A DNA stretch of 64,000 bases from Thalia democratica (lineage: Eukaryota): the NCBI GenBank assembly GCA_965202585.1, contig OZ241826.1, forward strand, positions 43,648,001 to 43,712,000, given 5' to 3'. Of the stretch, positions 18,001 to 49,300 are shown piece by piece. The notes under the pieces were generated by a model. The model worked only from the letters and a program-made list of their open reading frames with translations. It did not search any database and was not told where the DNA came from. The position numbers were made by a program, and so were the translations under genes. Numbering within the stretch: the stretch's first letter is position 1; each line of letters starts with the position of its first letter.

Positions 18001-21000
18001 TCAGCAACAACTGAACATCCTGAAACACCAGTTATCATTGAAACCACAACTACAACTGTTGAGAAAACTTCGACACCTATAACTTCTCAAACTACTGAAG
18101 GTAAATAAATAAGTTTTTAGCAACTTATGCTCATATACTTAATAAAAACTCGCCAAAAGTATAAGTAACTTCATTCATCTTCTAACATGTTAAAACTAAC
18201 TATTACTATTTTAAATTTTAAACATACTGAAAATTTCAAAATATTAATTAAACAATTAAAATGTTTGTTTAACAACAACTTTTCATGCTTCTAAACTAGG
18301 CAAAGAACCAAATGCAACAGTCGAGGTTACCACAACTGAAGTTGTTACAAAATCTCCTGTAATTTCTACAACATCTGAAGAAGCTGGTGTCACTACAACA
18401 CCTGTTACAGTTACAAAAACTACAACAAAAGGTAATGTTAAGTAATCATTTAGTTTTTATTTTTATTTGATACATGTTTTTCCATACAGAAACATATTCG
18501 CCAACATCACCAGAAACATCAACTGAGCAGTCATCAGTATCTTCAACAAAACAAATTGTTACAACTACTTACAAACCAATTGTCGTAGTAAGTACTACAT
18601 CCGAAGGTAAAACTGTTCCAACTGTAGTCTATGAAACAACAACTACGACTCAACAAGAAACTACTCCAATAATATCAGAAGAAACAACACCTTACTCATC
18701 AGAAGAAACAACACCTGTGTTTACAACTGTTATTGGTACAACTACTGAAGTTCCATTGCACGAAACTACAGTTCAATCTCATTCAACGTTTATTCCTTCA
18801 GGTAAGTTAAGTGTTTTTAGTTTCTAAAATAAGTTTGAAGTTTATCTTTCAAGTATTAAAATGTAAATGTTTTAATTTTTAATATATCTCTGTTATATAT
18901 TTTACCACAATTTTTATATATAAAAAGGTACAACTACCGAAAGTTTGGAAACAACCGTCTCAACAGGTTTGAATTTGATATATTTGAATTAATGATATAG
19001 GTATATTTAAGAAATTAAAAAGACTACAATTTTTTAAAACTTCATTCTTAGTCTCAACTGTTGTGTTAGTATAACCTACTTAGATAGCCAATAAAATTAA
19101 AATACTTTTAACTTTTAAGTACTAAATATACTTGAAACACAACATTACAATTTTAAACAAATTTATAACGATTCCTTTTTATAGATTTTTTTCTAAATCC
19201 TGTTTAATTTAACTTTTGATATACTTTTGTTTGAAGAGTATTTCGATATGCTTTTACACAACTTTAAAATACAACAGTTTATAAATTATTCGATCTTTTC
19301 AAAAATTTTGTGAGTAATTTAATATTCTTTCTGTTTTGTACTTTTGACAAAGAAATAAAACGGTTTGGAATGCAACGTGAAGAATTGTTTACTATAAAAT
19401 GTAAATTAAAATATTTTTACAGCACTAATTAATTTTTAAGAATTTGATAAACATTTAAATTGTTATAGAAACATCAACTCCAAGCAAAACTGTTTCTTTC
19501 ACAACAACAAAAGTTGAAACTACAAGTAAAATTGTAACAAACACTCCAGCTGAAGGAGTAACTCCTCCATTTGAAGAAGAAGTAACAACCATTTTTACAA
19601 CTACAACTTCAAAACACCAAACTTCACAACCATCAGGAACAACTGAACATCCTGAAACACCAGTTATCATTGAAACCACAACTACAACTGTTGAGAAAAC
19701 TTCGACACCAATAACTTCTGAAACTACTGAAGGTTAGCAAACTAGTTTTTAATTAACCATAATGTAAGATGTGAAATTTAGGAGTCTGATATAACATTAA
19801 AATGTTTAAAATTGGTGACTCTTTGTTAACAGAGGATTTTTCAATGTTCTAAAAGGGTAAAATAATAAATATAGATCGAAGTTTTGACGTTTTTGATTAT
19901 TTTTTCAACAGTTTTCATGTTTTTTTCTTATGTAAAAAGTTAACATAAACAAAAAATAATATTGTTTATCAGGTAAGAAACCAAATGCAACAGTCGAGGT
20001 CACGACAACTGAAATTGTTACAAAAACTCCTGTAATTTCTACAACATCTGAAGAAGCTGGTATCACTACAACACCGGTTACAGTTACAAAAACTACCACA
20101 AAAGGTTAAGTAAAGCTGTTTTGTTATTTAATATTATTTTTTGTGCTACTTTAAATTATGTTAAATTTATTTTGTAATTCTAATAAGTTTTTTACATTAA
20201 AATTTTCCAAAACAGAAACATATCAACCAACATCACCAGAAACATCAACTGAGCAGTCACCAGTATCTTCAACAAAACAAATTGTTACAACTACTTACAA
20301 ACCAATTGTCGTAGTAAGTACTACATCTGAAGGTGAAACTGTTCCAACTGTAGTCTATGAAACAACAACTACAACTCAACAAGAAACTACTCCAATAATA
20401 TCAGGAGAAACAACACCTTACTCATCAGAAGAAACAACACCTGTTTACTTTTCTACTGTTACTGTTGGTAAAACTACTGAAATTCCTTCACATCAAACAA
20501 CTATCGAATCAACAACAAAACCAACTTTTGTTCATACTACAACTTCGTACGAGTATCCAGAAAGTATGCTTAAGTTCTTGTAAACTTTTTTATTACTTAA
20601 AATATTTCTTTAAAGACTTGATTTTAAACTAATTGTTTATTTTCTCTACTATATCAACTATTTTATAAACAACAGAATCGACTGCCATTCAGACAACGAG
20701 TAAAACTACGCCTACAGGTAAGAAGTTTTAAACATTTTAGGCTTTTAAGTTACTTTTACCTTTAACTACTAAATTCACAGGTTAAATCAAATTTGATATT
20801 TTGTTCCAACTTTATATAAGTCCTTGTCCACAGAAAATAACGTAAAATAGTCCAATAATTAGAGTAAGTAAGAAACTGATTGAAACTTTACTAAATGTTT
20901 GTAAATACCACAGAGTAAAAAGTTTTATAAATAAAACTACCAACTTAACTACTAAATTTTTCAGTTAAACAGCAACATTAACAACTTCAGATAGAGTGTA

Positions 21001-24000
21001 ACTAAAAATTACCAAACGATGAAAAAGAGTTGCTTATTTTTAGGCATACATTATTAGTTTAAAAAACGTTTTTAACAAAACAGAAACATCAACTCCTAGC
21101 GAAACTGTTTCTTTCACGACAACAAAAGTTGAAACTACAAGTGAAATTGTAACAAACACTCCAACTGTAGGAGTAACTCCTCCATTTGAAGAAGAAGTAA
21201 CAACTGTTGTAACAACTACAACTTCAAAACAACAAACTTCACAACCATCAGCAACAACTGAACATCCTGAAACACCAGTTATCATTGAAACAACAACTGC
21301 AACTGTTGAGAAAACTTCGACACCAATAACTTCTGAAACTACTAAAGGTAAATATTTTCCATTAACCCGCAGTTTATCTTTGAAATTAAAATTCCTGATA
21401 CCAAGCTGAAAATTACAGCATTAATAGTTTTCTTTTAATACCTTTTATTTTAAGGAACAGTGTAATTTTTTATATAAAAAGTGTAATTAAAGTCTGCATT
21501 TTCGATAATAATAACTGTTTTTTGAACAGTTTTTAAGTTTTTTTTTTTTTGTATGAAAGTAAATTTAAACACAAAGTAATATTGTATATTAGGACAAAAA
21601 CCAAATGCTACAGTCGAGGTTACGACAACTAAAGTTGTTACAAAAACTCCTGTAATTTCTACAACATCTGAAGAAACTGGTGTCACTACAACACCTATTA
21701 CAGTTACAAAAACAACTACAAAAGGTAAAGTAAAGCTGTTTTGTTATTTAATATTATTTTTGTACTATTCTAAATTATATTAAATTGATTTTTTAATTCT
21801 AATAAGTTTTTTACATTAAAATTTTCAAAACAGAAACATATCAACCAACATCACCAGAAACATCAACTGAGCAGTCACCAGTATCTTCAACAAAACAAGT
21901 TGTTACAACTACTTACAAACCAACTGTCGTAGTAAGTACTACATCTGAAGGTGAAACTGTTCCAACTGTAGTCTATGAAACAACAACTACAACTCAACAA
22001 GAAACTACTCCAATAATATCAGGAGAAACAACACCTTACTCATCAGAAGAAACAACACCTGTGTTTACAACTGTTACTGGTACAACTACTGAAGTTCCAT
22101 CGCATCAAACAACTGTTCTATCTCATTCAACGTTTATTCCTTCAAGTAAGTTAAATAATAACAGTTAATTTAAAAATATTTTAAATATTATGTTTACAAA
22201 ATTTTGCAAAACAATTATCAAATTAAATATTTGCATTTTGAATAAACTAAGTTAAATGTTTGAAATAAAACTTTAAATAAAAAAAGGTACAACAGGTGAA
22301 AGTTTGGAAACAACCATATCAACAGGTTAGTATTTCATTTGTTTATAGATATTTTATGTTAAAGTTTTAATGGTATTTGTATAGATCTAATTTAGAAGTT
22401 CAAAAATGCGTCTATTTCTGTAAATTCTTATTCTTTTTTTTTGAAATATTTATAGTAGCATTAAAATAAAAAACTTAGTTTATTATAAACCAAATAATCC
22501 CGAAACACAAAAGTAATATTTATATCAAAACTTAACAAACCCCTTTTCGTATTAATTTTATAGAGATACTTTAATTTACTTTTTTATATAATTTTAATTA
22601 AGGTAGTATCTATTGTGGTTTCAAACAACCTGAAATACCAAAATTAACCATATAAGATATATATTCGTTATCAAAAATATTTTAATAATTCAATTTTTTT
22701 TTAGTAGTTTGCACTTTTGACAAAGCGATTATAAATTTACAATACAAAGTAAAAAAATTGTTTATTATAAAATGTAAATTAAAAAGTCTATTAGAACACG
22801 CTTAAAGTTTACTTACTTTTAAAGCATTCAACATATCTTTTAATTGTTTTAGAAACATCAACTCCTAACAAAACTGTTTTTATTACAACAACAAGAGTTG
22901 AAACTACAAGTGAAATTGTAACAAACGCTCCAACTGAAGGAGTAACTCCTCCATTTGAAGAAGAAGTAACAACTATTGTAACAACTACAACTTCAAAACA
23001 ACAAACTTCACAACCATCAGCAACAACTGAACATCCTGAAACACCAGTTATCATTGAAACCACAACTACAACTGTTGAGAAAACTTCGACACCAATAACT
23101 TCTCAAACTACTGAAGGTTAACAATATCTTTACAAAACAGTTTTAATAAACTTAGTTAACATAGATGATACATTTCCGAAACTGATAATTATGAAAATTA
23201 CCTTCATCTACTTATTACTTTAAAGTATTTTTCTTTATTATTTTGTATAAAGTAAATAAATAAATTTAGCAGTATAATTTTTTTTTTATATAACCCTTTT
23301 TTCTTTTATAGTCGAGTAAAAATACACAAAAATTAATGATTTTTTTTTTGAATTTAGGACAAAAACCAAAAGCAACAGTCGAGGTTACGACAACTGAAGT
23401 TGTTACAAAAACTCCTGTAATTTCTACAACATCTGAAGAAGCTGGTATCACTACAACACCTGTTACAGTTACCAAAACTACAACAAAAGGTAAAGTAAAA
23501 CTGTTTTGTTATTTAATATTAATTTATTATTTAGAATTTTATATTAATTAACTATTCAATATTATTTTTTGTACTATTTTAACTATGTTAAATTGATTTT
23601 GTAACTCTAATGATTTTTTACACTAAAATTTTCAAATCAGAAACATATCAGCCAACATTACCAGAAACATCAACTGAGCAGTCACCAGTATCTTCAACAA
23701 AACAAATTGTTACAACTACTTACAAGCCAACTGTCGTAGTAAGTACTACATCTGAAGGTGAAACTGTTCCAACTGTAGTCTATGAAACAACAACTACAAC
23801 TCAACAAGAAACTACTCCAATAATATCAGGAGAAACAACACCTTACTCATCAGAAGAAACAACACCTGTTTACTTTTCTACTGTTACTGTTGGTAGAACT
23901 ACTGAAATTCCTTCACATCAAACAACTGTCGAATCAACAACAAAACCAACATTTGTTCTTACTACAACTTCGTACGAGTATCCAGAAAGTGAGTAAAAAT

Positions 24001-27000
24001 TTATTTTGTGGTTACATATGGCTTTAAACTTTTTACTAACACTAGTATCTATATAAAACAAACAACTTATCTATAAATAACAGAATCAACTGCCGTTCAA
24101 ACATCTAGTGAAAACGTTCCTACAGGTAATAAGTTTGATATTTTAATAAAACGGATTCTAAGTTCCTTTTTTTTTTCTTTAATAATTGAGTATATTAATT
24201 AAAAATAATCATAATGCAACTTTTGCATGAGATGCTAGTTTTAAACATTTTTTAAGTATTTTGATCAATTATATTCCATAAACAGTAGAACTATATTTTG
24301 AATAGAAATAGTATAATAGTTTATATATTTTGAGTAAAATCTGACTATCTATCTAGGTGGAAAAACAAAAATTTATACAATGTAGTAAAGTTTCAGTATA
24401 TTATCTCTTCTATTCAAACACATGTTCAGACTTTTAGAATACAGAAATTATATTTTTTATCAAAACTTTTTTTTTATCTAAAAACTGAAAAAAAAAAATT
24501 ATTATATTCAATTTATTAACTTTCTCAACTAATTAATCTTTAAAAAAAGTTTTATAACTGTACAACAATTTGAAGCAAGATCGAATTTTATCTTAATTTA
24601 GATTTTAATTATTTCAGCTAAAGTTGTTCAGTTTAGTTTCTTAAGTTATGAACTTATATTGATAAAAAAAAAGTAGTTTTTGTTTTTTTACATTTCGTGG
24701 TCAATTTAGAAACATGTTTGACAAGATAATTATTTTATTATTTAAACTTAGACCGTGAGTTTTAAACAAAATTTTATAAATAAAATTATATTTTAAAGCT
24801 TATAAAGAAATCTAATAGCATCTTAATTTTTATGAAACTGTCTTAAACAAAAAATTATAAAATAAACTTTCAGTAAACTTACCAACTCACATACCAAATT
24901 ATCCGCCGGTTGAAGAGACCACAGTGGAGTCTTTAATTTCCGGTAAGTTGTAACTATAAACTTCAACAATCGATGAAAATACAGTTGTTTACTCATAAAT
25001 GCAGTTAAAAAATTATAAAGCGTTTGTAATAATACAGAAACATCTACTCCTGTAAAAACTGTTTATTTCACGACAACAAAAGTTAAAACTACAAGTGAAA
25101 TTGTAACAAACACTCCAACTGAAGGAGTAACTCCTCCATTTCAAGAAGAAGTAACAACTGTTGTTACAACTACAACTTCAAAACAACAAACTTCACAACC
25201 ATCAGCAACAACTGAACATCCTGAAACACCAGTTATCATTGAAACCACAACTACAACTGTTGAGAAAACTTCGACACCAATAACTTCTGAAACTACTGAA
25301 AGTTTTTTTTTTGTTCATTAAGTTTTAATTTGTCTTTAAAGTTTATGGTACTGATACGAAGCTAAGTTGTTTTATCAACACCTATTTATTTTGAAGATCA
25401 ATTTCTTTTTTATACAGAATTTATGAAAAATATATCTTGTCTGTATTTTTGGTATAAATAACTGATTTTCGAACAGTCTTTAAGTTTTTGCTTTGTTCAA
25501 TGAAAGTTAATATTTGACAAGAACTACTTTTTGGTAATAGGTGAAGAATCTAATGCAACAGTCGAGGTTACCACAACTGAAGTTGTTACAAAAACTCCTG
25601 TAATTTCTACAACATCTGAAGAAGCTAGTATCACTACAACACCTGTTACAGTTACTAAAACTACAACAAAAGGTAAAGTAATACTATGTTATTAACAAAT
25701 TAATTTTTTATACTATATTTTCTAATAGAAACATACCAACCAACATCACCAGAAACATCTACTGAGCAGTCATCAGCATCTTCAACAAAACAAATTGTTA
25801 CAACTACTTACAAACCAACTGTCGTAGTAAGTACTACATCTGAAGGTGAAACTGTTCCAACTGTAGTCTATGAAACAACAACTACAACTCAACAAGAAAC
25901 TACTCCAATAATATCAGGAGAAACAACACCTTACTCATCAGTAGAAACAACACCTGTGTTTACAACTGTTACTGGTACAACTACTGAAGTTCCATCACAC
26001 GAGACTACTGTTCAATCCCATACAACAGAAGTTTATCAGACTTTCAAAACACCAAAGGGTACGTAATCTATATTTTGTTACACAAAAATAGTATTTTATT
26101 AATTAGTTTACTCAAACTTAATAAACATATAAAACATATTTTCAAATTTAATAGACATTTATTTCGTAAGAATATACATGCAAATTTAAATATTTTAATA
26201 AGAACTTTTTTTAATGTCGCAGGTACTACAACTAAGGTTCCAAGTACAGAGTTCACTGCAAGTTCTACAGAAAAAGAAACTACTGTGACATATGAACCTG
26301 GTAGCAGACAAACTGGTTAGATCTGTAGTTTCTTGTGGTCCTTAATAATACAAACTATTGCAAAAATTTCAAATATTATTCAACAGAAACAACGTCACAT
26401 TTTCCAACTGAAGCACCATCGGCAACTGTTGTGAGCTCAACATCTTCAGTTGAGACAACTTCGGAACCAACAAGTGTCACAACTCAAACTGGAACAATCG
26501 AGTCCACTGTTACTTTCAACGTTGAAACAACAACGGTCATCACTGAAACAGCGACCCCGACTGCTGGTATACAAATACCTTTTTTTTAATTTACTTTAAA
26601 AAAATACTTTTAATTATATATAAATTTAAATCGTTTATTTTTCACTATAACTTTCCAGGTGGAGAAACTACTACTTTAGAAGTGACTAAAACTGAAGTTG
26701 TCACTAAAACACCAGTTGCTACACAATCCCCAGAAACTTCAGAAACGACAACTCCAGTGACTGTGGTTGAAACTACAGAAACAGGTAATTTAGTATGACG
26801 TGTTAAAAAATGTAAACATCATTAAACAGCTTTTATTACAGAAATATTTGAAACAACAACACCGTTGGGCACATCAACCGAGGCTCCCTCAGTACCAGTT
26901 ACCACAACAACAAAAGTCGTAACAACCGCTTACATTCCGACAACAACAACAACAGAAAGTGAAAACAACACCACCGTCTACCGGACGGTGACCAGCACTA

Positions 27001-38923: not shown

Positions 38924-39546
38924 GGGAACGGTTCAAAATTGCACAAAGACAAAATTGCACGAGATTACTAAATTGCACAAAGACAATTTTGGACGAGTTA
39001 CAGTTTTGCACGAGAGTAAAACAAAAAACAGATAAAAAACTTAAAAAAAAAATTAATAAAAAAAACAAAAAGAAATAAAAAGTTACTGACCGAGGGTAAG
39101 GAATAGGGGTAACAGTGATAGTAATATAAAAATTAAAAATGAACTATTTGCTTTGGGTATGTAACTCTACCGAGAGGTCTTTTTGCGTATCCAGGTCCTT
39201 AAACCAAAATGTTTTGAGCAATTTTTCGTTTTTGTTAAAAAACCACCTATAAGATTATTATTAGAAAAAAAAAAGTTACCCACTGAGGGTAAAGGTTAGA
39301 GGTAACAGTGATAGTAAAAAAAAATATACATAAAAGTTACCGACCGAGGGTAAGAGTTAGGGGTAACGGTGAAAGTAAAAAAAAACAAAAAAAATTTATA
39401 ATAACCCTTGCAAAATTGTCTGCTCGTGCTATAGTGTCTTCCTGCAAAAGTATCTTTGTGCAACTTTACCCCCTCGTGCAAAAGTGTATTCGTGCAATTT
39501 TGTCCCCTGCAATTTTGTACGCTCGTGAAAGTTTGACAGCTACCCC
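38924..39546. mobile_element. MITE with perfect 8-bp TSD (aaagttat) and GG-initiated termini, containing a nested copy of the dispersed repeat
   Basis: aaagttat at 38916-38923 and 39547-39554. Ends gggaacggttcaaaattgcac and (reverse complement) ggggtagctgtcaaactttcac. Subterminal tgcacga/tgcacaa repeats. ttac(c/t)gaccgagggtaag cores. Repeat insert at ~39148-39240. Confidence 0.8.
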
Positions 39547-40446
39547 AAAGTTATCTATAAGTTTAAGTTTCTATAAATCTAACAGCTTTAAGTGTTGTAG
39601 TTTCTTCAGCGTCTAATTTTGAAAATTTAGCATTAAAAAATTTACTTTTAAAGCAGCTAGATTTAGTAAAGCTTCACTTATATCGGGTTTTCTCTGCAAA
39701 CTCAAAAAATGTATTAGAAAAAGTTCATTCCGTCAAGTATAGTCGTATTGAGAACATTTTGCAACTTTAAAAATGTTCATAAAAGTTTTTGATTGTCTGA
39801 GAAAATCGTCACACAACTACTTGAGCATGACATTTTAAGTAAAAATTAACAAACATTTATACTTTTTCATTATTGTATTCTGGCAATCCTATTGAAGGTT
39901 TTCACAAAATAGTTATCTAACAATTTTTAACTTTAATCATTGATATTGTATTTTTTTTTTTTTTTCTTGATTGTAAAAAAGTCAGTGAGATTTATAAAAT
40001 TGTTAACCATTACTAACTTTTTTGTACCTTATAAACTTAGACGGAGTTTGTTATAGTTTAGATATTTTTTTATTTAAACTATTAATCTAATAGTTTATAG
40101 ATAAAGTCTTAAAATAGTCACAAAATGTATCATAAATCAGTAAAAATCATAAAAACTGATATAAATACTAATATACATAATTTTCTTTGACTACTTTTAT
40201 TTCATGGCAAACTTTCAGAAGCACTGCTTTTCAACCCTGGAGTTGAAGCTTGAATAAAAAAACTTACTGCTTCTATGTCATTTTTGAATGCTATAGTATG
40301 CACTTTATAACTAATTCATTTCCTTCAACAGCAATGGGTGAGTAGTTGAACTATTGTCAATGATTTGACTGTTACAAAATCATAATAATATTAACTTCAA
40401 GTATTCTTTAGTAAGTAGACTTAAATTGTTTATAATAACTATATGT

Positions 40447-40531
40447 GTGCATTGATGACTAATACTTAGGACACCTAAGGAGAGTGTGACAACTCAATGT
40501 TTAAGAACCAAGTTATTTCCACACTGAGCAC
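40447..40531 (+). ncRNA. SNORD58: C/D box snoRNA, SNORD58 (U58)-like
   Basis: C box TTGATGA 40452, D box CTGA 40524, terminal stem gtgc/gcac. Guide cttaggacacct (40465-40476) is antisense to LSU rRNA AGGUGUCCUAAG and matches the U58 element as recalled. Lies in an intron gtaagt(40411)..tttcacag(40596). Confidence 0.78.
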
Positions 40532-42290
40532 ATGTTATTTTAAAATTTATGTATGTTATTTTTCAATATTTTCTAATGAAAATATTATTTCACAGAGCAC
40601 AAAAGTTACAGCACCCACAGTCTTGGTGGAATATGGATGGATAGTGAAGTGAAAATTTGAGGTTGGTATTTTTCAAGTTATAACAATCAACTATTTATTT
40701 TTAGTATAAATCATTACAGTTGTTATTAAGTTAGTCCATATTTAGCTTCATTAATTTGGTTAAAATTTAGCAATTTAGACAATTGCTGTGTTGTTGTACT
40801 ATTACATAAAAAAGTAATATTTAACTGTTTTTACTAAATACTATCATGAAATTTTACTAATCAAAATGGTATTTTCTAATCTTCTTCTCAAACGGGTTGT
40901 AAAGGTTTTCCATCCACGTTTGTTATACTATTTTTAATAATAATTACACTCAAATAAACACACTGTGAGTATGATATTGAAAGTTTAAATGTGTCAAGGT
41001 TTGGTACAGTTATCTGAACCATAAATCGACATTATATTGTGAATTAGTAATCATCATTCATATGAATATAACATAACATTTGTGAATCTATATTATTACC
41101 AAATAGTCACATTCAATCACTAATCCATTTTCACTAAATAGCTAAATTTCCTAATTGGTATCATTTAGTTTGAGTCAAGAAGACTTCAACATAATATCAA
41201 TTACACTGTAATACTGAACTAAAATCTTAAACTGAATGGTTCTTAAAGTTTTAAATTATACATTACAGTTAAAACTAAACAAAGACTGTAGAGCAAAACA
41301 TTGTTATAGTGACATTTTAACACACTTAGTTTGATTGTTCATTTCACCCAAATATCAATACCATACTGCATTTATTCTTTTGGTACATGTGTAGATTGTC
41401 ATGATCAGTGTTTAGGAAATTTTAGGTTAATAAACTACAATGTTTCTAGTAATCTAATGTTGTAATAGGTGTAATTTATAGGAAATATGTAAGAAATTTC
41501 ACAAGTAATATTAATTAAGAAACTGCATTATTGTATATTATCACAATTTAATTTGGACTATACATGATTTAAACTGTTTTAACTAAACATAAACTGTACA
41601 TAATTATATAACTAAGTTTAAATTTTTGTTAGGATTATCCAAGTAAATCTAATTTATTTAACTAATACTAGCCTAATAAATGTCTAGAAATAAAAAAAAT
41701 CTGAGTCTATCTGAAAGTATCTAAATTCTTGGTTTGAAATTTGTAGCTAGATTATTGTAAACATGTTTCATATATAGTAAAGGATCCCAAAGCTTGTTTT
41801 TAGTAACAAAATTATTCTTGAAATAACTGTATATCTGTAGCCTTGGCACACATATTGTGAATACTCAAAGTAGTAACTTACCTGAAATTAGTTATCTTCA
41901 AAGGAATTAAATTATTGCCAAAGAAGATATTAGAATTCTTGCTAAACACTAAACTACAGATAAAATATAACTATTAATTGCCTTTATATAAGTTAACATT
42001 TGCAAATGATTAATTTATACGTGGCATTTGGTCAGATTATGCTCAGATTTGAAATGTTCTATTTTAATCAGAGCTCATTATGGCGATTCTCGTTATATGA
42101 TGCAAAAAATAAAAACTAATCATAAATACTTCACCAATACTTATTAATAACATTTAATTTTTCCACAGATCTGAAACTAGTTGCTGACAGATGCACTCCA
42201 GAATATATCACAAGGCGACTCAATTGAAAAAGCAGTTCTATGGGTAAGTTTGAAAATATATATTTACATATTATTATACTTAGATATAAA

Positions 42291-42368
42291 TTAATGATGA
42301 CTTCGTGCACCACTCTCAAGAAGGACAATGTGGAAAATTTACGAATTTACCCAAATAACTCTGAATAA
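42291..42368 (+). ncRNA. SNORD32: C/D box snoRNA, SNORD32 (U32)/snR40-like
   Basis: C box ATGATGA 42294, D' CTCA 42315, D box CTGA 42361. D' guide gtgcaccact pairs 18S GGUGGUGCAU with the 5th nt on the G equivalent to human Gm1328. A possible second guide tacccaaat pairs LSU AUUUGGGUA. Confidence 0.7.
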
Positions 42369-42527
42369 TTGTATTATTTAACCCAAATTAAAGCATTTAA
42401 GTTAATCCGTGTCAACATGATATTTTTTTATTTAGGTAAAAGACAATCTGCTGAATGAAAACAAACAGAGAGAGAGAGTATGTACATGTTAATTATTGTT
42501 TGTAGTTTTCAGTGGTATAAATTATAT

Positions 42528-42592
42528 TGCTATGATGACAATTTAGAAGCGCTTACATAACATATTGATGACTTCTCTATCCCACTGAGCAC
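42528..42592 (+). ncRNA. C/D box snoRNA, target unassigned
   Basis: C box ATGATGA 42532, C' TGATGA, D box CTGA 42585, stem tgc/gca, intronic. D guide cttctctatccca has only a 9-nt match to an 18S-like GGGAUAGAG. Confidence 0.68.
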
Positions 42593-42754
42593 TTACATAA
42601 TATCAAGCTAAATTATGATAGTTTGTATTATTTGTAATAATTTTAATACTTTTGCAGAACAAAAAAAGAAGCAAATGAAAAGAAAAAAAAAAACAAATAA
42701 AAAGTGATACTAGGTAATTTAAGTTCAATTCATTTATTTCTATCCATAATATGT

Positions 42755-42816
42755 TAACATGATAGAAACTATTTGTATCAGAATTATTTTGATGATACAC
42801 CCAGCTCTCTGAAAAC
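42755..42816 (+). ncRNA. C/D box snoRNA predicted to methylate the C of LSU GAGCUGGGU (yeast Cm2948/snR69-equivalent)
   Basis: Degenerate C box ATGATAG 42759, D' CAGA 42779, C' TGATGA 42790, D box CTGA 42809. Guide acccagctc pairs GAGCUGGGU, and the 5th nt (g42804) pairs the C. Confidence 0.62.
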
Positions 42817-42977
42817 TATAATTTAATCTATACACACAATTAATGTGATTACATTTTCTAATCTTACATTTTTTTTCAGAAACTTGTTGTCATGGATTTG
42901 GTGATCCAAAAGAAAAGAACAATTTCAAAAGGTGAGCTTTAAATTTAATAACTAGTTTTAACTTTTAAGCAGTTAAC

Positions 42978-43045
42978 TAAAATGATGAGATTTACTTCTG
43001 GTCCGTGTTTTTGATAAATATGATAACATAAGAAGCTCTGAAACA
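42978..43045 (+). ncRNA. SNORD18: C/D box snoRNA U18
   Basis: C box 42982, D' TTGA 43011, D box 43038. 12-nt guide tggtccgtgttt is antisense to LSU AAACACGGACCA, the U18 element. Confidence 0.88.
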
Positions 43046-43188
43046 TAAATTGATGCTACTTAATTTTTTTATGGTGATAACTAATTTATTAACTAAAATA
43101 ATTTTTGTAGTTACAAATCAAGTTGAAACAAGAACAAGGGATGGCAGTGAAAGCACGAAATGGTTACTATTTTATATGTTTTTATGAT

Positions 43189-43328
43189 TTTGTCCTCAAA
43201 AAAGCACCATTATAATGCATATATTACTTTGTGGTTGTCGAACGGGACTAAATAAATTGGTGTTGTGTTTGTGGGTGAGTGGGCTAGTTTTCACATATTT
43301 GCCCCACTCAAGAACATAACACACATTT
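43189..43328 (+). ncRNA. SNORA21: H/ACA snoRNA, SNORA21 (ACA21)/snR10-like
   Basis: Hairpin 1 pocket aaaagc / tgtcg fits LSU CGACG-Psi-N-GCUUUU, 14 nt from H box aaataa (43250). Hairpin 2 pocket gtgggtg / caa fits the A-loop UUG-Psi-U-CACCCAC, 14 nt from ACA (43323) followed by ttt. Confidence 0.85.
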
Positions 43329-43520
43329 AATTAAAAATAATATTTTTATCAACATTAAACTTTCATTATCAATTATATATATTTATTTTAAATTTTAATG
43401 CTTAACAAATTATTAGAAATGAGCATCACAACCACAACCTACCTGCCAACCACGATTCTAAGTTGGTCTCCAAACCCAAGTGGTGAGTATTTTTGAATAT
43501 TCGTATCATGTTATAAATTA

Positions 43521-43584
43521 AGCAATGATGAACTTTTGATAGGGACAACTGAAAATCAGTGATTATTTATCGTTTTCTGAGTCT
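43521..43584 (+). ncRNA. SNORD74: C/D box snoRNA U74-like
   Basis: C box 43525, D' CTGA 43549, D box 43577. Guide gatagggaca is antisense to LSU UGUCCCUAUC with the 5th nt on C (human Cm3820 equivalent as recalled). Confidence 0.8.
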
Positions 43585-43756
43585 ACTTAATTAAACCTAT
43601 TGATATGCCTAAATTATATCCTTTCTTTGAATATGAATATTTTTTCAGGTATTTCAACATCAATAATTAGTAGACGATGTTCCGTGAAAAAGTGGTGTTT
43701 TGGTAAGTTCTGTTAAAGTTGTTGAGATGCAAGACCTATTTAGATTTATTAGTTTT

Positions 43757-43823
43757 TTTAATGATGATATTCAAGGCATAGTTCACCTGAATATAAAGGA
43801 TGACAATTTACCTAACTGACAAA
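43757..43823 (+). ncRNA. SNORD80: C/D box snoRNA U77/U80-like, copy A
   Basis: C box 43761, D' CTGA 43787, D box 43816. 13-nt guide aggcatagttcac is antisense to LSU GUGAACUAUGCCU with the 5th nt on A (human Am1521 / yeast Am817 equivalent). Confidence 0.82.
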
Positions 43824-43993
43824 ATAAATATAAAGTACATTTTAAATTTCAAAAGTCAACCACAACTTAAAGTATAAATTAATTGCAGGGTTACTAACCT
43901 TCTGAACAACAAGATAAGTTGCGCCTTAAGTCCTACCATTTACAGGTAAGAATTGACTATATTTGACCATATTAATCATTTTAATTTAATTCT

Positions 43994-44134
43994 ACCCTGT
44001 TGTTGCTTGTCTGTCAGTTTCTCAATAAACTAAAAGCAGATTTTATATATAACAGGAAAATTAAATATTTACATTTAACCGTGCTTGATTTCGCAACATT
44101 GATGTTTGAAAGCCTCCGTGATGTAAATACATTT
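43994..44134 (+). ncRNA. H/ACA snoRNA copy A (3' pocket compatible with 18S GGAG-Psi-AUGGUUG; SNORA40-like?)
   Basis: Stem cctgtt/aacagg, then H box aaatta; stem tttacatt/tgatgtaaa, then ACA at 44129 followed by ttt. Pocket taaccg / ctcc lies 15 nt from ACA. Confidence 0.75.
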
Positions 44135-44317
44135 AATTGTATTAAAAATTTGCATTAAAAAAATTAGTTTCACATATTTATGATTGCCTATTTTTGTAGG
44201 TACCAAGTCTTGGCGATTGTTGTGCTGAAAATTTCCAGGCACTAAAAGAATTAGTCAATTAAACCATCGGGTAATTACAATATTATTATTTAACTGTTTT
44301 TATAAATATAATAAAAT

Positions 44318-44406
44318 CTGCAATGATGATGTTTCCACGTTCGCAGTTTCCACTGAATACTTTTTAAGTAAATGTCAGCGAAAATCTTCCTTGGATGTCT
44401 GAGCAG
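44318..44406 (+). ncRNA. SNORD14: C/D box snoRNA U14
   Basis: Stem ctgc/gcag, C box 44323, D box 44399. Domain A cgttcgcagtttc pairs 18S GAAACUGCGAAUG; domain B cttccttggatgt-CTGA. Both hallmark U14 elements are present. Confidence 0.93.
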
Positions 44407-44583
44407 TTATAAAAATATTAGAAGTTCATTTTATTTAATTTGAATTGAATTAACCATGTATTTCAATACACAGGTCACATTTATGCTAATGTTCCTAGCA
44501 ACTGGATGTTTCATGCTGAAGTCTTCCCAACAAAGTAATTGAAATTTTAGATACATACTAAAGAAATAATAAGTATAAAAGCT

Positions 44584-44653
44584 AAGCAATGATGATTCTG
44601 TCTCGTTCGTCTGAACATATTTTGTTGACCCATCTCTAAGAAGTCCTGAGCTT
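44584..44653 (+). ncRNA. C/D box snoRNA with two 18S guides: U30-type (D') and U61-type (D)
   Basis: Stem aagc/gctt, C box 44589. D' CTGA 44611 follows gtctcgttcgt (antisense ACGAACGAGAC). D box CTGA 44646 follows ctctaagaagt-c (antisense ACUUCUUAGAG). Confidence 0.85.
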
Positions 44654-44844
44654 ATTTTTGTAATAATATTATACATGATTGTATTATATCATATGAGTTC
44701 ATTGAAACAATATTAAATAATTAAATTTTTAGATACCACTGAACAATCTGAAGACCTGATACGTGCTGTGAAAAAGTGAAACTAAGCTGAAACTAAGCTG
44801 TGAAGGTCAGTACTTGAGTTTTTTATTTTGCAAATAAATATGAA

Positions 44845-44911
44845 TTTTGTGATGATATTCAAGGCATAGTTCACCTGAATAATAAGGATGACAATTTACC
44901 TAGCTGATAAA
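44845..44911 (+). ncRNA. SNORD80: C/D box snoRNA U77/U80-like, copy B
   Basis: Near-identical to 43757-43823. C box GTGATGA 44849, D' 44875, D box 44904. Confidence 0.82.
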
Positions 44912-45058
44912 TTTAAAAGTATGTATACTACTAAGTAACAAAAAATACTTCTATTAATTTATCAATATAAATAACAGGAGGAAGAATATCGACAAATCAA
45001 CTGTTGGAATTCACCTCACTCAGGTAATTTTCAACTAAAAAATATTTAGTTAAATTAT

Positions 45059-45201
45059 ACCCTGTTGTTGCTTGTCTGTCAGTTTCTCAATAAACTAAAA
45101 GCAGATTTTATATATAACAGGAAAATTAAATTAATTTACATTTAACCGTGCTTGATTTCGCAACATTGATGTTTGAAAGCCTCCGTGATGTAAATACATA
45201 T
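45059..45201 (+). ncRNA. H/ACA snoRNA copy B
   Basis: Near-identical to 43994-44134, differing only in the hinge. ACA at 45196. Confidence 0.75.
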
Positions 45202-45437
45202 ATTTATAAAATTACAAGTGCAACAACAGTAAAATATGAAATTTTATTTATGAATTTTTATATTTACAGTTTTCTAAATGCTAGCAGTAAAGTTGTGAAA
45301 TCTATACAAATCAGATGAATCAAGCCGTAAGCAGTCAGATGGTCAAATAAGCTTCATTTCCATAATTTCATATTTTAAAAAGGTAATTTGACTGGAGTTG
45401 TTGGTTTTACTAAAGAATATGGTTTAACTAAAGATAA

Positions 45438-45512
45438 AGCTATGATGATATTTTCTGTCAATCCCCAGAAATGAGATTTTTTAGTGTTGAAAATTGCTAA
45501 CTTCCTGAGCTT
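45438..45512 (+). ncRNA. SNORD110: C/D box snoRNA, SNORD110 (HBII-55)-like
   Basis: Stem aagc/gctt, C box 45442, D' CAGA 45466, D box 45505. Guide tctgtcaatcc is antisense to 18S GGAUUGACAGA with the 5th nt on the first U. Confidence 0.78.
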
Positions 45513-45676
45513 AAAAACTATAACTAAATGATTAACTTTTCAGATTCCGACAATTTTAATAAATATATTATTTGTTTCAGGCGGTTCAAAAGCCAAGGAA
45601 TGAAAAATAGATGAGCATAATCTCACAAGAATTTCAAAAGGTAAAATATTGTTAAACTTACTAAAATAAAACTAAT

Positions 45677-45752
45677 AAAAATGATGATACCTGGAATTAC
45701 CGTCTGAGATAATTACTATTATTGAAGACAACAATAAGGCTGTTTCTGATTT
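45677..45752 (+). ncRNA. SNORD65: C/D box snoRNA, SNORD65/snR77-like
   Basis: C box 45681, D' CTGA 45704, D box 45746. 13-nt guide ctggaattaccgt is antisense to 18S GCGGUAAUUCCAG with the 5th nt on U (human Um627 / yeast Um578 equivalent). Confidence 0.85.
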
Positions 45753-45944
45753 ACATATTTTAAATTGTCTTAAAAACTTATAAGGTTAATTTATCTCTAA
45801 AAAAACTGTTAAATTTTAGGTTCCATACCGATATCAGGCGGGACCAAAGTCGTCCACTTGTAACAAATGAATTTCCACACCATGTCAGTGGAAGTACTTA
45901 TTAAGAGGTGAGATTCATTGTGTAGTATTTTATTGAAAATAAAA

Positions 45945-46009
45945 CCATTATGATGAGAATTCCACAAGACAGAATTTTAAATTGTTGAGTTGGGTGAGAT
46001 CCTGAATGG
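45945..46009 (+). ncRNA. C/D box snoRNA, target unassigned
   Basis: Stem ccat/atgg, C box ATGATGA 45950, D' CAGA 45970, D box CTGA 46002. Guides (ttccacaaga; gttgggtgagatc) were not confidently matched to rRNA. Confidence 0.68.
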
Positions 46010-46174
46010 CAATGATTAAATTCAACTAAGTATACTGAGGTTTAAGTATAAAGTTTTCAATTGTTTATATTTTGCAGATTCCTCTGAGTATGGAATCATG
46101 GCGGGATTCTATATAAAGACTTGCGGAACTTTGTACTGATGTGAGTTAATTGAAAACATAATTTTAAATTAAAA

Positions 46175-46301
46175 GCGCAAATAAGTTCCAAAGCTTTACT
46201 TGATTGAGCATTTGGCGTTCCCTTTGCGAAAACCAAAATCTTGGCATGCTATGTGTATTTTGCTATATATGCAATTTTACATACGTCGTCAATAGACATT
46301 T
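46175..46301 (+). ncRNA. SNORA10: H/ACA snoRNA, SNORA10/snR37-like
   Basis: Stem gcgcaaa/tttgcg; upper stem ccaaa-gct/agc-tttgg. Pocket agtt / cgttccc fits LSU GGGAACG-Psi-G-AGCU, 14 nt from H box aaacca (46230). Second hairpin ttggc/gtcaa, ACA at 46296 followed by ttt. Confidence 0.8.
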
Positions 46302-49300
46302 TGTTTAGTATTATAATCTAATTACCAGAAATTTCAATAAAAACTATATTATAATATAATATATTCAAACAGAAAGAAAACCACCAAATAACCACCAAAC
46401 CTCTTGGATGATGCTGTTTGATGGCCGAGTTTTTATTATTTTTGATCGTATCATTTGTTTTAATAAAAGAAAAAAAAATACTAATCACTTGTTAAATGTA
46501 TAAAGCTATATTAAATATTAAACAAGTTTTTAACGAAATATCAACTGAAAGCCTAATCAATAAAAGTTATCTAAGATTGGGAGATTAGTTGAAAACAAAA
46601 TAAATATAAAAAACAAATATTTAAATAGCAATAAGTATTTGGTAGGCTTGATCGCATCGACAGGGCAATTTTGAAATCTGCCATACTAAAAGCAACAAAA
46701 ATAGCCTTGGTATTGCAATATAAGATTCCTTGGTTACTTTTTTACATTTGAAACGATTATTTTAAAAAAAATATCTTCAAACAGATAAATTTTGTTAAGC
46801 AAGATGGTTTAAAGGCCAATAATATGAAACGCAACCTAAAAAAATCTTGAATTGCTTCGTATTAAGTGCAGGGGTTGGCTATATGCAACCGTACAGTAGT
46901 TCAGTAACGCTCCAGCCTACGATAATGTTATTTTTAAATCGGATGTTACCTGCGACCTCGTAATCGTAGCCCGCGAGTATCAAAATAGAAACATATAACA
47001 ATCCTGATGTTTCTATATCGAAGATCTAAAATTGGGACTGAAATACTATTGAAATATATTTTTGAAATTTGTCCGAGACCATCAAATGCATGCCATCCCT
47101 GGAGTGTAACAAATTTAGATATAAATTAATAATGCAATAGTTTTTAGATTATTGGTGAATTTTGTTGCATTATTAAATTTATTTAAAAATAATCGAAATG
47201 TTAACTATTAGAATCCTTTATCCGCCCTGCGTTTAGGAGTATGCAGTGACTTGGTGAAGGGCAAAAATTAGTAAACAGTTTAGCAGCACTTTTTCTACCA
47301 AAATTTCTATACTAAATATTTATAACCCACTTAATAATAAGATTGCTCCTGAATGGTAATGTCTGACTGATAGTAACATTTAAGATCTTTTGTTTTTAAA
47401 CTACTCTAGTGTAATTATAGATCCATCGTATATCTTTTTAATTATTTGAGTAAAACTTATATTTAGTATTATAGTTACAGCCGCTAATTTAGCTAGGATA
47501 TATACACTTATCATTTATGCCCTTGTAATAATCTGAAACGTCAAAATTCATACATCCTAATCGTTCGAATATCAATTTAACATAGGTTTTTCGAGATGAA
47601 ATCACAAGTATTAACTTTGTTAACAACTAGGTTCAAATCTATTCACGAACATACCTATAAAACTCAATTAATCTAAGAGATTATCTGTTCAAGGTTGCCA
47701 ATGAATCTGGAAGCCTAGAAAAAAATATGGGATTTTAAACAACTTTAATATGTTGAGCAGTAAGATTTTGACTTGACTCAAAAAGTCTATGGTATCGATA
47801 AATATTTTTGTAGTCGAAAATTTATGTTATTAAAAAAAGACATCTAAAGAAGCTAACATAAAATTTCAATGTCGTTATACTATATATCACATTTTTTACC
47901 TAAAACTTATATTTAAACAAAAAATAGACCTTTGAGCGTGTAATTTTAAACAAAAAATAGACCCTATAGCGTGTAAATTTTAAAACTTGAAAGAAATTTT
48001 GCAAACTGGGAGAAAAATTACCAAACACATTTGTCAATCCTGTCTGTTACAATGTGTTTTTGAAAATAAACAATTAGGTTTAGCTTAAGTTTTGAATAAT
48101 TTTTTTACATAACAAAAACTGAGGAAATGTTTAGATTACTATGAATAAAATTATTTGAAATAGAAAAATAAGGCTACTAAAAATTATTATGATTGTTTCT
48201 TTTGATGTATTCAAGGTTGTCAAAAAACATGAAATCCTGGAAAAACAACTAAAGCCAAAAAACCTAGAAATTTGAACAAAAACCACTAGATAAAGATAAT
48301 ATTTTAGACTATTTATATGATACTATTATGTAACGTAATGGAATTTCGATAAGTTACGTAAAATATATCATATAGATATAGTTTTTTTTTGTTTCATTTA
48401 AAATTGTTATATATCAAACAGCATATTTAAAGTAGCTTCAATACATCTTTACTATGTTGTTTTATTAATATAGTCAGTTTTCTACCTTAAATTTAGTTTC
48501 TTTCTTCAAATAAGCCAAAAAACTTGCTTTTAACTTACCTATAAGTAATTCAGAAAACCTTGTAGAACTTTCAAAAAAACCTTTGGCAACCTAGTATATA
48601 CTAAAAGTATACAATTTATTTCCTAGTTTAAGTTCCCTCACATCTAATATTATTCATTTTGAATTAGTTTTTGTTTAAACTAAATACATTTAAAATAGAT
48701 ACAAAAATCATATTTGTTAATATTGCATCTTAAATTATCAGAAGTCCTATATTAACATTGTACATGTTAAAAATATACTTTTAATATACTACAAACGTTT
48801 AATTAATAAAAAAGAGGCAAGTTTCTTTAAAATTAGTCGATTGAATCAATCTCACATATAAAACTTAATTTAGAATATATCTACCTCCATTTCTACACTC
48901 TTTTTGTTATGCAGCATACTTAATTTACCTGATAATTACTGCTAATTTACTTCGTAAGCTACCGCAAGTTGAGTATTTGCTTCGCGCTGTGTAAATAGAG
49001 CCAGTTGTCATTAATTTAATAAATCAAGCCAATATATTAAAACTTTCAAAAATAAATTACTGAAAAAGAGTTCGTTTTTAGACTTTGTTAAGAGATTTTT
49101 TTAGCTGTTCAATTCTCTTACTTACAGATAGTAAGAAAACTAGTGATCCGGATTCCGGTCAGATCTTTTTTCAGATAGCAATTTGTGTTAAATTATACAA
49201 CTTTTAACCATTTAGTTGTTTCTTAGCAGTTATTAGGTTCAACCTAATAAGATATCAAGTAGCTTGTAATTTTATTTATAATCAATATACTTTGGTATAT

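What the first reader, a model, noticed from the sequence alone, without database searches (positions are those of the whole stretch)
40332..46490. Dense non-coding snoRNA host gene: at least 17 snoRNAs, one per intron, in about 6 kb
Seen: consecutive short GT-AG introns each hold one C/D or H/ACA unit with boxes, terminal stems and rRNA-antisense guides, while the exons are non-coding. Established (recalled): in human these families sit in many different hosts (U74/U77/U80 in GAS5, U30 in SNHG1, U18 in RPL4, U14 in HSPA8/RPS13, U58 in RPL17, U32 in RPL13A, ACA21 in RPL23, ACA10 in RPS2, U61 in RBMX, SNORD110 in NOP56, SNORD65 in SNHG29). Inference: a lineage-specific 'super-host' assembled by snoRNA relocation, including the processing snoRNA U14. 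Protein-centred annotation would call this region intergenic.
Basis: partly seen in the sequence, partly recalled or inferred. Interest (0 to 1): 0.8.

Follow-up and report, generated by a model that had tools for sequence, protein, structure and literature searches.

The report
Non-coding host gene with 18 intronic snoRNAs
This 6-kb stretch is very probably a gene that makes no protein and exists to release 18 small ribosome-modifying guide RNAs, one from each intron; it is a well-known kind of gene (like fly Uhg1 or human GAS5), here one of several duplicated copies in the genome of an AT-rich marine invertebrate.

Summary
Window 40338-46372 (+) holds 18 GT-AG introns. Each carries one snoRNA-like unit: 14 box C/D (one of unassigned family) and 4 H/ACA.

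- **Family matches:** Rfam finds SNORD18 above threshold. U14, SNORD61, two snR60/Z15 copies and a U74-clan unit fall just below it.
- **Guides:** Against this genome's own rRNA, 16 of 41 box-anchored guide tests score high, against 2 of 41 with reversed rRNA.
- **Position:** Every snoRNA ends 59-88 nt (median 65) before the 3' splice site.
- **Exons:** The spliced exons have stops in all frames.
- **Conservation:** Against paralogous arrays, snoRNAs are 86% identical, exons 58% and intron flanks 62%.

It is a non-coding multi-snoRNA host, but not a unique 'super-host'. The genome has at least three more arrays of the same families in similar order. The scan has already noted one of them, at C1:31.13 Mb, on other DNA (s1-301179, 'at least 43'). 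U14 has at least 22 copies, some in HSP90 introns. Drosophila Uhg1, with 16 snoRNAs one per intron, is a close precedent.

No usable RNA data exist, so splicing and expression are inferred. I class it as a new member of a known kind, of moderate interest.

The parts
40200..40337 (+). Exon 1. The 5' end is unknown. The donor is TGG|GTGAGT at 40338. A TATA-like CTATAGTA lies about 30 nt upstream of a pyrimidine run TTTCCTTC.
   Evidence: Read from the sequence. No CAGE or RNA data. No E-box within 39000-40700.
40447..40532 (+). Intron 1, box C/D snoRNA, SNORD58-like. A 12/12-bp guide pairs with 28S 2891-2902. A second guide of 11 bp pairs with 28S around G1639.
   Evidence: Conserved 92-94% in paralogs, with flanks diverged.
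42002..42106 (+). Intron 2 (1507 nt), a C/D-like RNA of 105 nt. Terminal stem TTTGCA/TGCAAA, C = ATGATTA, D = ATGA. The D' guide is 13 nt with 1 mismatch, pairing with 28S around A2518. Family unassigned.
   Evidence: 83-85% identical in two paralog arrays. No Rfam hit. Ends 62 nt before the 3' splice site.
42287..42371 (+). Intron 3, box C/D snoRNA. The guide after box C is conserved. Pairing with 18S 1273-1284 or 28S 1757-1769 is ambiguous.
42525..42592 (+). Intron 4, box C/D snoRNA with boxes C, C' and D. The stretch after box C is nearly invariant and has no convincing rRNA match, so it is an orphan guide.
42756..42816 (+). Intron 5, box C/D snoRNA. C = ATGATAG, C' = TGATGA, D = CTGA. The D guide is 12 nt with 1 mismatch and pairs with 28S, pointing at C3192.
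42977..43045 (+). Intron 6, SNORD18 (U18). The guide GGTCCGTGTTT pairs with 28S 816-831, which by the family's geometry points at A821.
   Evidence: Rfam 47.1 bits against a threshold of 41. Pairing. Alignment.
43190..43328 (+). Intron 7, H/ACA snoRNA: hairpin, AAATAA hinge, hairpin, then ACA 3 nt from the end. Target not resolved.
   Evidence: 40 consensus pairs, 4 of them compensatory, with 8 of 280 cells unpaired across 7 copies. Target search no better than the control.
43519..43589 (+). Intron 8, box C/D snoRNA of the Me28S-Cm2645 / U74 clan. The D' guide GATAGGGACA pairs with 28S, pointing at C2575.
43752..43827 (+). Intron 9, box C/D snoRNA of the snR60/Z15 clan (U77/U80-like). The D' guide pairs with 28S 988-1001 over 14/14 bp, pointing at A993.
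43992..44133 (+). Intron 10, H/ACA snoRNA, 96-99% identical to copies in three other arrays.
44318..44406 (+). Intron 11, U14 (SNORD14). Element A pairs with 18S 82-94. The D guide pairs with 18S 412-425, pointing at C416.
   Evidence: Rfam 59.8 bits, E 1e-11. Pairing. At least 22 copies in the genome.
44586..44653 (+). Intron 12, SNORD61-like. The D' guide pairs with 18S, pointing at A1332. The D guide pairs with 18S, pointing at U1385.
44841..44915 (+). Intron 13, second copy of the snR60/Z15-clan snoRNA, with the same 28S A993 guide.
   Evidence: Part of a duplicated block: 43762-44141 against 44850-45208, 76.6% identity over 385 nt.
45059..45200 (+). Intron 14, second copy of the H/ACA snoRNA found in intron 10.
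   Evidence: In the duplicated block the snoRNAs are 94% identical, the exon 51% and the intron flanks 57%.
45437..45513 (+). Intron 15, box C/D snoRNA, SNORD110-like. An 11/11-bp D' guide lies before a CAGA box and pairs with 18S, pointing at U1237.
   Evidence: 14 further distinct sequences in the fetched arrays.
45675..45757 (+). Intron 16, box C/D snoRNA (snoR77Y/Afu_300 hits, SNORD65-like by target). A 12/12-bp D' guide pairs with the 18S 530-loop region, pointing at U581.
45945..46009 (+). Intron 17, box C/D snoRNA with terminal stem CCATT/AATGG. The D guide is 12 bp with 2 G-U pairs and pairs with 18S 1209-1220. This is not better than the control.
46174..46301 (+). Intron 18, H/ACA snoRNA. 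The 5' hairpin pocket pairs over 8+4 bp around 28S U3188. The paralogs fall into two sub-families with the same 5' hairpin and unrelated 3' hairpins.
40596..46140 (+). Seventeen internal exons of 42-113 nt: 40596-40661, 42169-42243, 42436-42477, 42658-42713, 42880-42931, 43111-43162, 43417-43482, 43649-43702, 43889-43945, 44200-44270, 44474-44534, 44733-44805, 44978-45023, 45270-45382, 45581-45640, 45820-45907, 46078-46140.
   Evidence: Predicted from GT...AG sites. The donor of exon 7 (ATG|GTTACT) is weak, and 43147 is an alternative. Exon GC is 37%, against 21% in intron flanks.
46373..46490 (+). Last exon, with AATAAA at 46463-46468.
   Evidence: Read from the sequence. No snoRNA-like hit from 46302 to 48000.

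Best explanation
The locus is a dedicated non-coding snoRNA host gene of the Uhg / SNHG type.

**Proposed mechanism (inferred).** RNA polymerase II transcribes one precursor of about 6.3 kb. The spliceosome removes 18 short introns. Each excised, debranched intron is trimmed by exonucleases down to the snoRNP-protected core. This releases 14 box C/D and 4 H/ACA RNAs.

**What the products do (inferred).** Most guide 2'-O-methylation or pseudouridylation of 18S and 28S rRNA. U14 additionally pairs with 18S for processing. The spliced exons are a by-product with no protein product.

**How the locus arose.** It is one member of a family of such arrays that grew by duplication of whole arrays and of intron-plus-exon modules.

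**Shown here:** the snoRNA features, guide complementarity to this genome's own rRNA, the splice-site layout, the lack of an ORF, and the conservation pattern.

**Inferred:** transcription, splicing, processing and the actual modifications.
For: 1. **Family matches.** Rfam matches to six units lie at or near threshold, with the family guide elements conserved.
2. **Guide pairing.** 16 of 41 box-anchored guide tests score at least 19 against the genome's own rRNA. Only 2 of 41 do so against reversed rRNA. Perfect 12-14-bp duplexes sit directly before D/D' boxes in five units, and the SNORD58-like unit in intron 1 has a 12-bp one with no clear D' box.
3. **Splice layout.** All 18 introns are GT-AG. 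The distance from snoRNA 3' end to 3' splice site is 59-88 nt (median 65), and from donor to snoRNA the median is 44 nt. This matches the known preferred position of intronic C/D snoRNAs, about 50 nt upstream of the branch point (PMC5519232).
4. **Same layout in paralogs.** In 100 spacers of the fetched arrays, 95 have a better acceptor-plus-donor pair on the snoRNA strand than on the opposite strand. The medians are 64 nt, 64 nt and 41 nt.
5. **No ORF.** Stops occur in all frames, and the longest ATG ORF is 52 aa.
6. **Conservation.** Against paralogs, snoRNAs are 86% identical, exons 58% and intron flanks 62%.
7. **H/ACA structure.** The H/ACA folds are kept across copies, with compensatory changes.
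8. **Copy integrity.** Boxes and guides in this locus are as intact as in the paralogs.
Against: - There is no RNA evidence. The three runs that hold the stretch are genomic DNA contigs with flat coverage.
- The 5' end, promoter and any 5'TOP are undefined, and no E-box was found.
- The exon 7 donor is weak.
- H/ACA target predictions are no better than the control.
- Four C/D units (introns 3, 4 and 17, and the second guides of several others) lack a convincing rRNA target.
- With several paralogous arrays present, this copy could contribute little.
Confidence: 0.82

Rival explanations
1. The locus is a silent or decaying duplicate. The larger arrays at C1:39.33 Mb and C1:31.13 Mb would supply the snoRNAs, and this smaller copy would be a recent duplicate that is not expressed or is on its way out.
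For: Every family but one here also occurs in the larger arrays, often in several copies. Intron 2 has 1.3 kb with no recognisable unit where the paralog has extra units. No RNA evidence exists.
Against: All 18 introns keep GT-AG and the tight spacing. Boxes and guides are as canonical as in the paralogs, or more so; for example, SNORD18 has TGATGA here and TGATCA at C1:39.33 Mb. The snoRNAs are 86% conserved while their flanks have drifted to about 60%, which indicates continued selection since the duplication.
Confidence: 0.08
2. The locus is an unspliced polycistronic cluster. The units would be cut out of a precursor by endonucleases, as in plant or yeast snoRNA clusters, and the 'exons' would be mere spacers.
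For: The array is dense and same-strand with about 260-nt spacing. Splicing has not been observed.
Against: Consensus donors and pyrimidine-rich acceptors flank every unit at fixed distances. G|GTRAG occurs 9 times on the + strand and once on the - strand. The pattern recurs in 95 of 100 paralog spacers. Spacer 'exons' are GC-richer than their surroundings, 37% against 21%.
Confidence: 0.07
3. The introns belong to a protein-coding gene, lying in its UTR or between short coding exons.
For: In this genome other snoRNAs, including U14, do sit in protein-coding hosts such as HSP90.
Against: No frame stays open across the spliced exons. No coding-looking ORF lies within 4 kb on either side, and the 102-aa ORF at 39308-39616 has no Pfam match. 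The exons are the least conserved part of the locus.
Confidence: 0.02

Closest known systems
Drosophila Uhg genes, above all Uhg1 (16 snoRNAs, deletion spans about 4.2 kb; PMC4430873)
   Same: Both lack an ORF. Both have many short introns, each with a single rRNA-guide snoRNA, in mixed families on one strand. Size and density are similar.
   Different: This locus mixes C/D and H/ACA units and includes U14. It belongs to a set of paralogous arrays with repeated modules, and no E-box was found near its start. Expression is untested.
Vertebrate non-coding hosts GAS5, SNHG1 (UHG) and other SNHGs
   Same: In both, exons are poorly conserved while the intronic snoRNAs are conserved. The one-per-intron rule holds. 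C/D units sit at a fixed distance from the 3' splice site.
   Different: The human hosts carry about 8-10 snoRNAs and are single-copy. This locus carries 18, with sister arrays of roughly 30-40 or more. A 5'TOP start and NMD sensitivity were not testable.
Mammalian imprinted tandem arrays: SNORD115/116 in SNHG14 and SNORD113/114 in MEG8
   Same: Both grew by tandem duplication of intron-plus-exon modules, giving dozens of one-per-intron units.
   Different: Those arrays are homogeneous orphan families expressed in brain. These are heterogeneous guides with canonical rRNA targets.
Plant, yeast and trypanosome polycistronic snoRNA clusters
   Same: Dense multi-family clusters arranged on one strand.
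   Different: Those clusters are released by endonucleases and are not separated by spliced exons. Here every unit is bracketed by splice signals.

Membership tests
Non-coding multi-snoRNA host gene (Uhg / SNHG type) | Several introns, each holding a single snoRNA in the sense orientation | tested here: met
   18 predicted GT-AG introns hold 18 units. The splice sites are predicted, not observed.
Non-coding multi-snoRNA host gene (Uhg / SNHG type) | Spliced exons have no conserved ORF and evolve faster than the snoRNAs | tested here: met
   Stops in all frames and a longest ORF of 52 aa. Exons are 58% identical to paralogs against 86% for the snoRNAs.
Non-coding multi-snoRNA host gene (Uhg / SNHG type) | A spliced, polyadenylated host transcript exists | not testable with these tools
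   Only genomic DNA runs were available. AATAAA at 46463 is the only hint.
Non-coding multi-snoRNA host gene (Uhg / SNHG type) | 5'TOP or growth-regulated promoter (Myc E-box in flies) | tested here: inconclusive
   A pyrimidine run TTTCCTTC lies about 30 nt downstream of a TATA-like motif. There is no CACGTG in 39000-40700 and no motif shared with the paralog upstream regions.
Box C/D snoRNA | Boxes C (RUGAUGA) and D (CUGA) near the ends, usually with a short terminal stem | tested here: met
   12 of 14 units have canonical C and D boxes. The units in introns 2 and 5 have variant boxes that are conserved in the paralogs.
Box C/D snoRNA | A guide of at least 10 bp ending next to D or D', placing the target opposite the 5th nucleotide upstream | tested here: met
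   Met for 10 of 14 units against the genome's own rRNA, with 16 of 41 tests against 2 of 41 in the control. Not met or ambiguous for the units in introns 3, 4 and 17. For the unit in intron 1, the D' box after the 12-bp duplex is unclear.
SNORD14 (U14) | Two 18S-complementary elements (A and B) plus C/D boxes | tested here: met
   Element A pairs over 13 bp with 18S 82-94, and element B over 14 bp with 18S 412-425. Rfam gives 59.8 bits, just under its threshold of 64, because the Y-domain hairpin is shortened.
Box H/ACA snoRNA | Hairpin, H box (ANANNA), hairpin, then ACA 3 nt from the 3' end | tested here: met
   All four units fold this way. Conservation stops just after ACA, and the pairs are kept across copies.
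Box H/ACA snoRNA | A pseudouridylation pocket complementary to a target, 14-16 nt from the H or ACA box | tested here: inconclusive
   The best case is 8+4 bp around 28S U3188 for the unit in intron 18. Overall, scores do not exceed the reversed-rRNA control.
All units | Accumulation as stable RNAs of 60-145 nt, and modification of the predicted sites | not testable with these tools
   No small-RNA, RiboMeth-seq or pseudouridine data.

The most novel reading that the evidence does not exclude
In this probably cnidarian, spliced-leader-using animal, most rRNA-guide snoRNAs, including the essential U14, may have been gathered into a few very large non-coding host genes of 18 to more than 40 introns each. 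These would turn over by duplication and loss of intron-plus-exon modules and by swapping of H/ACA hairpins. That would place dedicated non-coding snoRNA hosts outside Bilateria, either as an ancient invention or as a convergent one. It would also offer a natural system for studying birth and death of snoRNAs.
Probability: 0.4. Interest if true: 0.55.

Novelty: new member of a known kind. Interest (0 to 1): 0.4.

Why it matters
The finding gives protein-blind annotation of an 'intergenic' stretch. It supplies a set of 18 guide RNAs with predicted rRNA targets for a poorly studied lineage.

Together with its sister arrays, it shows that snoRNA supply here depends on duplicated non-coding hosts rather than on ribosomal-protein introns alone. 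That makes two questions testable: how such hosts arise, and whether exon sequence matters at all.

It does not reveal a new mechanism.

Tried and rejected
- **RNA evidence.** Both run searches and the single read-laying run gave only genomic DNA contigs. No junctions, ends or expression could be read. The joints seen reflect paralogous copies, not splicing.
- **rRNA by Rfam family.** Searching the whole genome with Rfam rRNA families failed. I found the rDNA with a conserved 18S pattern instead.
- **H/ACA candidate at 40880-41040.** Rejected. The fold is non-canonical, there is no paralog and no Rfam hit, and target scores equal the control.
- **Unit at 42002-42106.** The H/ACA reading was rejected in favour of a C/D-like RNA.
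- **H/ACA target assignment.** Not distinguishable from the reversed-rRNA control.
- **Promoter.** No E-box, and no motif shared with the paralog upstream regions.
- **Coding potential nearby.** None within 4 kb on either side.
- **Literature.** I found no description of Uhg-like hosts in cnidarians. The Hydractinia genome paper lists snoRNAs only through Rfam. The search covered open-access papers only.
- **Organism.** Not established. 'Probably cnidarian' rests on weak protein-atlas taxa and on unchecked notes from other readers.

Full report
**What is there**

The window is AT-rich, about 27% GC. It lies at C1:43,648,001-43,712,000 of an 802-Mb assembly.

A threshold-level Rfam scan of the whole window finds one family, SNORD18 at 42977-43045. 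A permissive scan of 39-48 kb gives 35 matches. All but one are snoRNA families on the + strand, and they cluster at 13 places between 40447 and 46286. The strongest are:
- U14: 59.8 bits, E 1e-11.
- SNORD18: 47.1 bits.
- SNORD61: 40.7 bits.
- Two snR60/Z15 copies: 38.2 and 35.9 bits.
- Me28S-Cm2645: 32 bits.

Their alignments show that the family-specific guide elements are intact.

Reading the sequence and scanning for boxes gives 14 box C/D or C/D-like units and 4 hairpin-hinge-hairpin-ACA units.

**Gene structure**

I placed 19 exons by GT...AG sites. This gives 18 introns with a median length of 195 nt, each containing exactly one unit.

The layout is strikingly regular:
- From snoRNA 3' end to 3' splice site: 59-88 nt, median 65.
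- From donor to snoRNA 5' end: median 44 nt. Introns 1 and 2 are longer.

This is the position known to favour splicing-coupled assembly of intronic C/D snoRNPs, about 50 nt upstream of the branch point (PMC5519232).

G|GTRAG occurs 9 times on the + strand of the locus and once on the - strand. Internal exons are 37% GC, snoRNAs 34% and intron flanks 21%.

The 1351-nt spliced product has stops in every frame, and its longest ATG ORF is 52 aa. No coding-looking ORF lies within 4 kb upstream or downstream. An AATAAA sits at 46463. The 5' end is not defined.

**Do the guides fit this animal's rRNA?**

I located the rDNA with a conserved 18S pattern and fetched one repeat. Rfam delimited 18S, 5.8S and 28S within it.

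Unanchored duplex searches return perfect 12-14-bp matches directly in front of D or D' boxes:
- snR60/Z15 copies: 28S 988-1001.
- U14: 18S 412-425 and 82-94.
- SNORD61-like: 18S 1328-1338 and 1382-1393.
- The unit in intron 16: 18S 577-589.
- The SNORD58-like unit in intron 1: 28S 2891-2902, though no clear D' box follows this duplex.

In a test anchored on every D-like box, 16 of 41 boxes reach a score of 19 with real rRNA. Only 2 of 41 do so with the reversed sequence.

Differences between predicted 18S sites match the differences between the human sites I recall for the corresponding families: C462, U627, U1288, A1383, U1442. That is recall, not a tool result.

Three C/D units (introns 3, 4 and 17) and most second guides have no convincing target. 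The unit in intron 4 carries a nearly invariant 20-nt stretch with no rRNA, U2, U5 or 5S match, so it is an orphan guide.

For the H/ACA units my pocket search did not beat the control. The best case is 8+4 bp around 28S U3188 for the unit in intron 18. That site is four nucleotides from the C3192 predicted for the C/D unit in intron 5.

A search of the whole assembly with the 6.3-kb locus gives 118 matches, almost all confined to the snoRNA intervals. They fall in arrays at these places:
- C1:39.326-39.341 Mb.
- C1:31.129-31.141 Mb.
- C1:98.061-98.062 Mb.
- Two small contigs, C53 and C112. These are 85-92% identical to the first two arrays and are probably haplotigs.

After fetching them, each large array shows at least 29 units homologous to the window's, on one strand, at about 250-300-nt spacing and largely in the same order. 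Rfam adds families that this window lacks: SNORD83, SNORD31, SNORD16, SNORD24 and Me28S-Am982.

The array at 31.13 Mb is the one another first-stage reader noted as 'at least 43 intronic snoRNAs' (s1-301179). The scan has therefore met this kind of locus before, on other DNA of the same genome.

Splice-site matrices built from the window's sites were applied to 100 inter-unit spacers of the fetched arrays. In 95 of them the best acceptor-plus-donor pair is stronger on the snoRNA strand than on the opposite strand. The medians are 64 nt from snoRNA to acceptor, a 64-nt exon, and 41 nt from donor to snoRNA.

Aligned block by block, snoRNAs are 86% identical between this locus and the paralogs, exons 58% and intron flanks 62%. 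This is the signature of a host whose only selected products are the intronic RNAs.

Family alignments show sharp conservation boundaries at the snoRNA ends, with invariant boxes and guides. The H/ACA structures are maintained, with compensatory changes.

Inside the window, the block snR60-like unit, exon, H/ACA unit is duplicated: 43762-44141 against 44850-45208. In that duplicate the snoRNAs are 94% identical and the exon 51%.

**U14**

U14 has at least 22 copies in the assembly. Besides the arrays, copies lie in an intron of HSP90 genes on C2 and, as tandem duplicates, on C4. U14 is therefore not confined to this host. Its presence here looks like copy gain rather than a simple move.

**What it most likely is and how it works**

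It is a Uhg/SNHG-type non-coding host gene. The closest described precedent is Drosophila Uhg1. Fly Uhg genes have up to 16 introns, each coding for a single snoRNA, and no ORF (PMC4430873).

The inferred mechanism is the standard one: transcription, splicing, debranching and exonucleolytic trimming to the snoRNP core.

I could not observe any RNA. The only runs holding the stretch are genomic DNA contigs. Two marine metatranscriptomes hold a few words of one test stretch but could not be examined.

**Rivals**

The rivals are a silent duplicate, an unspliced polycistronic cluster and a coding host. The evidence against them is:
- the intact splice signals and boxes;
- the strand-specific splice pattern repeated across 100 paralog spacers;
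- the absence of any ORF.

**Verdict**

It overstates its uniqueness, and its proposed origin is untested.

Novelty: a new member of a known kind. Interest is moderate. It rests on the size and multiplicity of such arrays in what is probably a non-bilaterian animal; that lineage assignment is itself unverified.

Noticed in passing
L026 (G000:C2:71390001-71399000) about 4288-4389 (+); L025 (G000:C4:55218001-55227000) about 4415 (-): U14 copies lie in an intron of HSP90 genes, between exons matching Pfam HSP90 profile positions 70-119 and 117-177. Four such copies at C4:55.19-55.27 Mb suggest tandem HSP90 duplicates. In vertebrates U14 sits in HSC70 (recalled), so this is a different chaperone host. 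I found no paper on it.
   Followed up: partly
L015-L018 (G000:C1:39324001-39342000 and C1:31127001-31143000), L019 (C1:98059001-98064000): These are larger sister arrays with at least 29 units homologous to the window's, plus SNORD83, SNORD31, SNORD16, SNORD24 and Me28S-Am982. They share the same splice-site layout. C53 and C112 hold 85-92% identical versions, which are probably haplotigs.
   Followed up: partly
L014 (G000:C79:26000-35999): The 15-kb rDNA repeat carries U2 (6973-7168), U5 (7250-7364) and 5S rRNA (9142-9260) in the spacer after 28S.
   Followed up: no
window 46174-46301 and its paralogs: This H/ACA family splits into two sub-families. They share a nearly identical 5' hairpin but have unrelated 3' hairpins, as if hairpins had been exchanged between copies.
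   Followed up: no
window 42539-42560: The stretch after box C of the C/D unit in intron 4 is nearly invariant in eight copies. It has no match of 12 bp or more in 18S, 5.8S, 28S, ITS, U2, U5 or 5S, so it is an orphan guide whose target is unknown.
   Followed up: partly
window 8265-26001: Eleven tandem copies of a unit of about 1.7 kb, 80-97% identical, account for the block of strong GC and AT skew. They probably represent repeated exon-intron units of the mucin-like gene that ends near 29 kb.
   Followed up: no
L024 (G000:C1:74788001-74797000) about 3427 and 5821 (-): Two U14 copies lie in a 2.4-kb tandem unit with no recognisable coding exon nearby.
   Followed up: no
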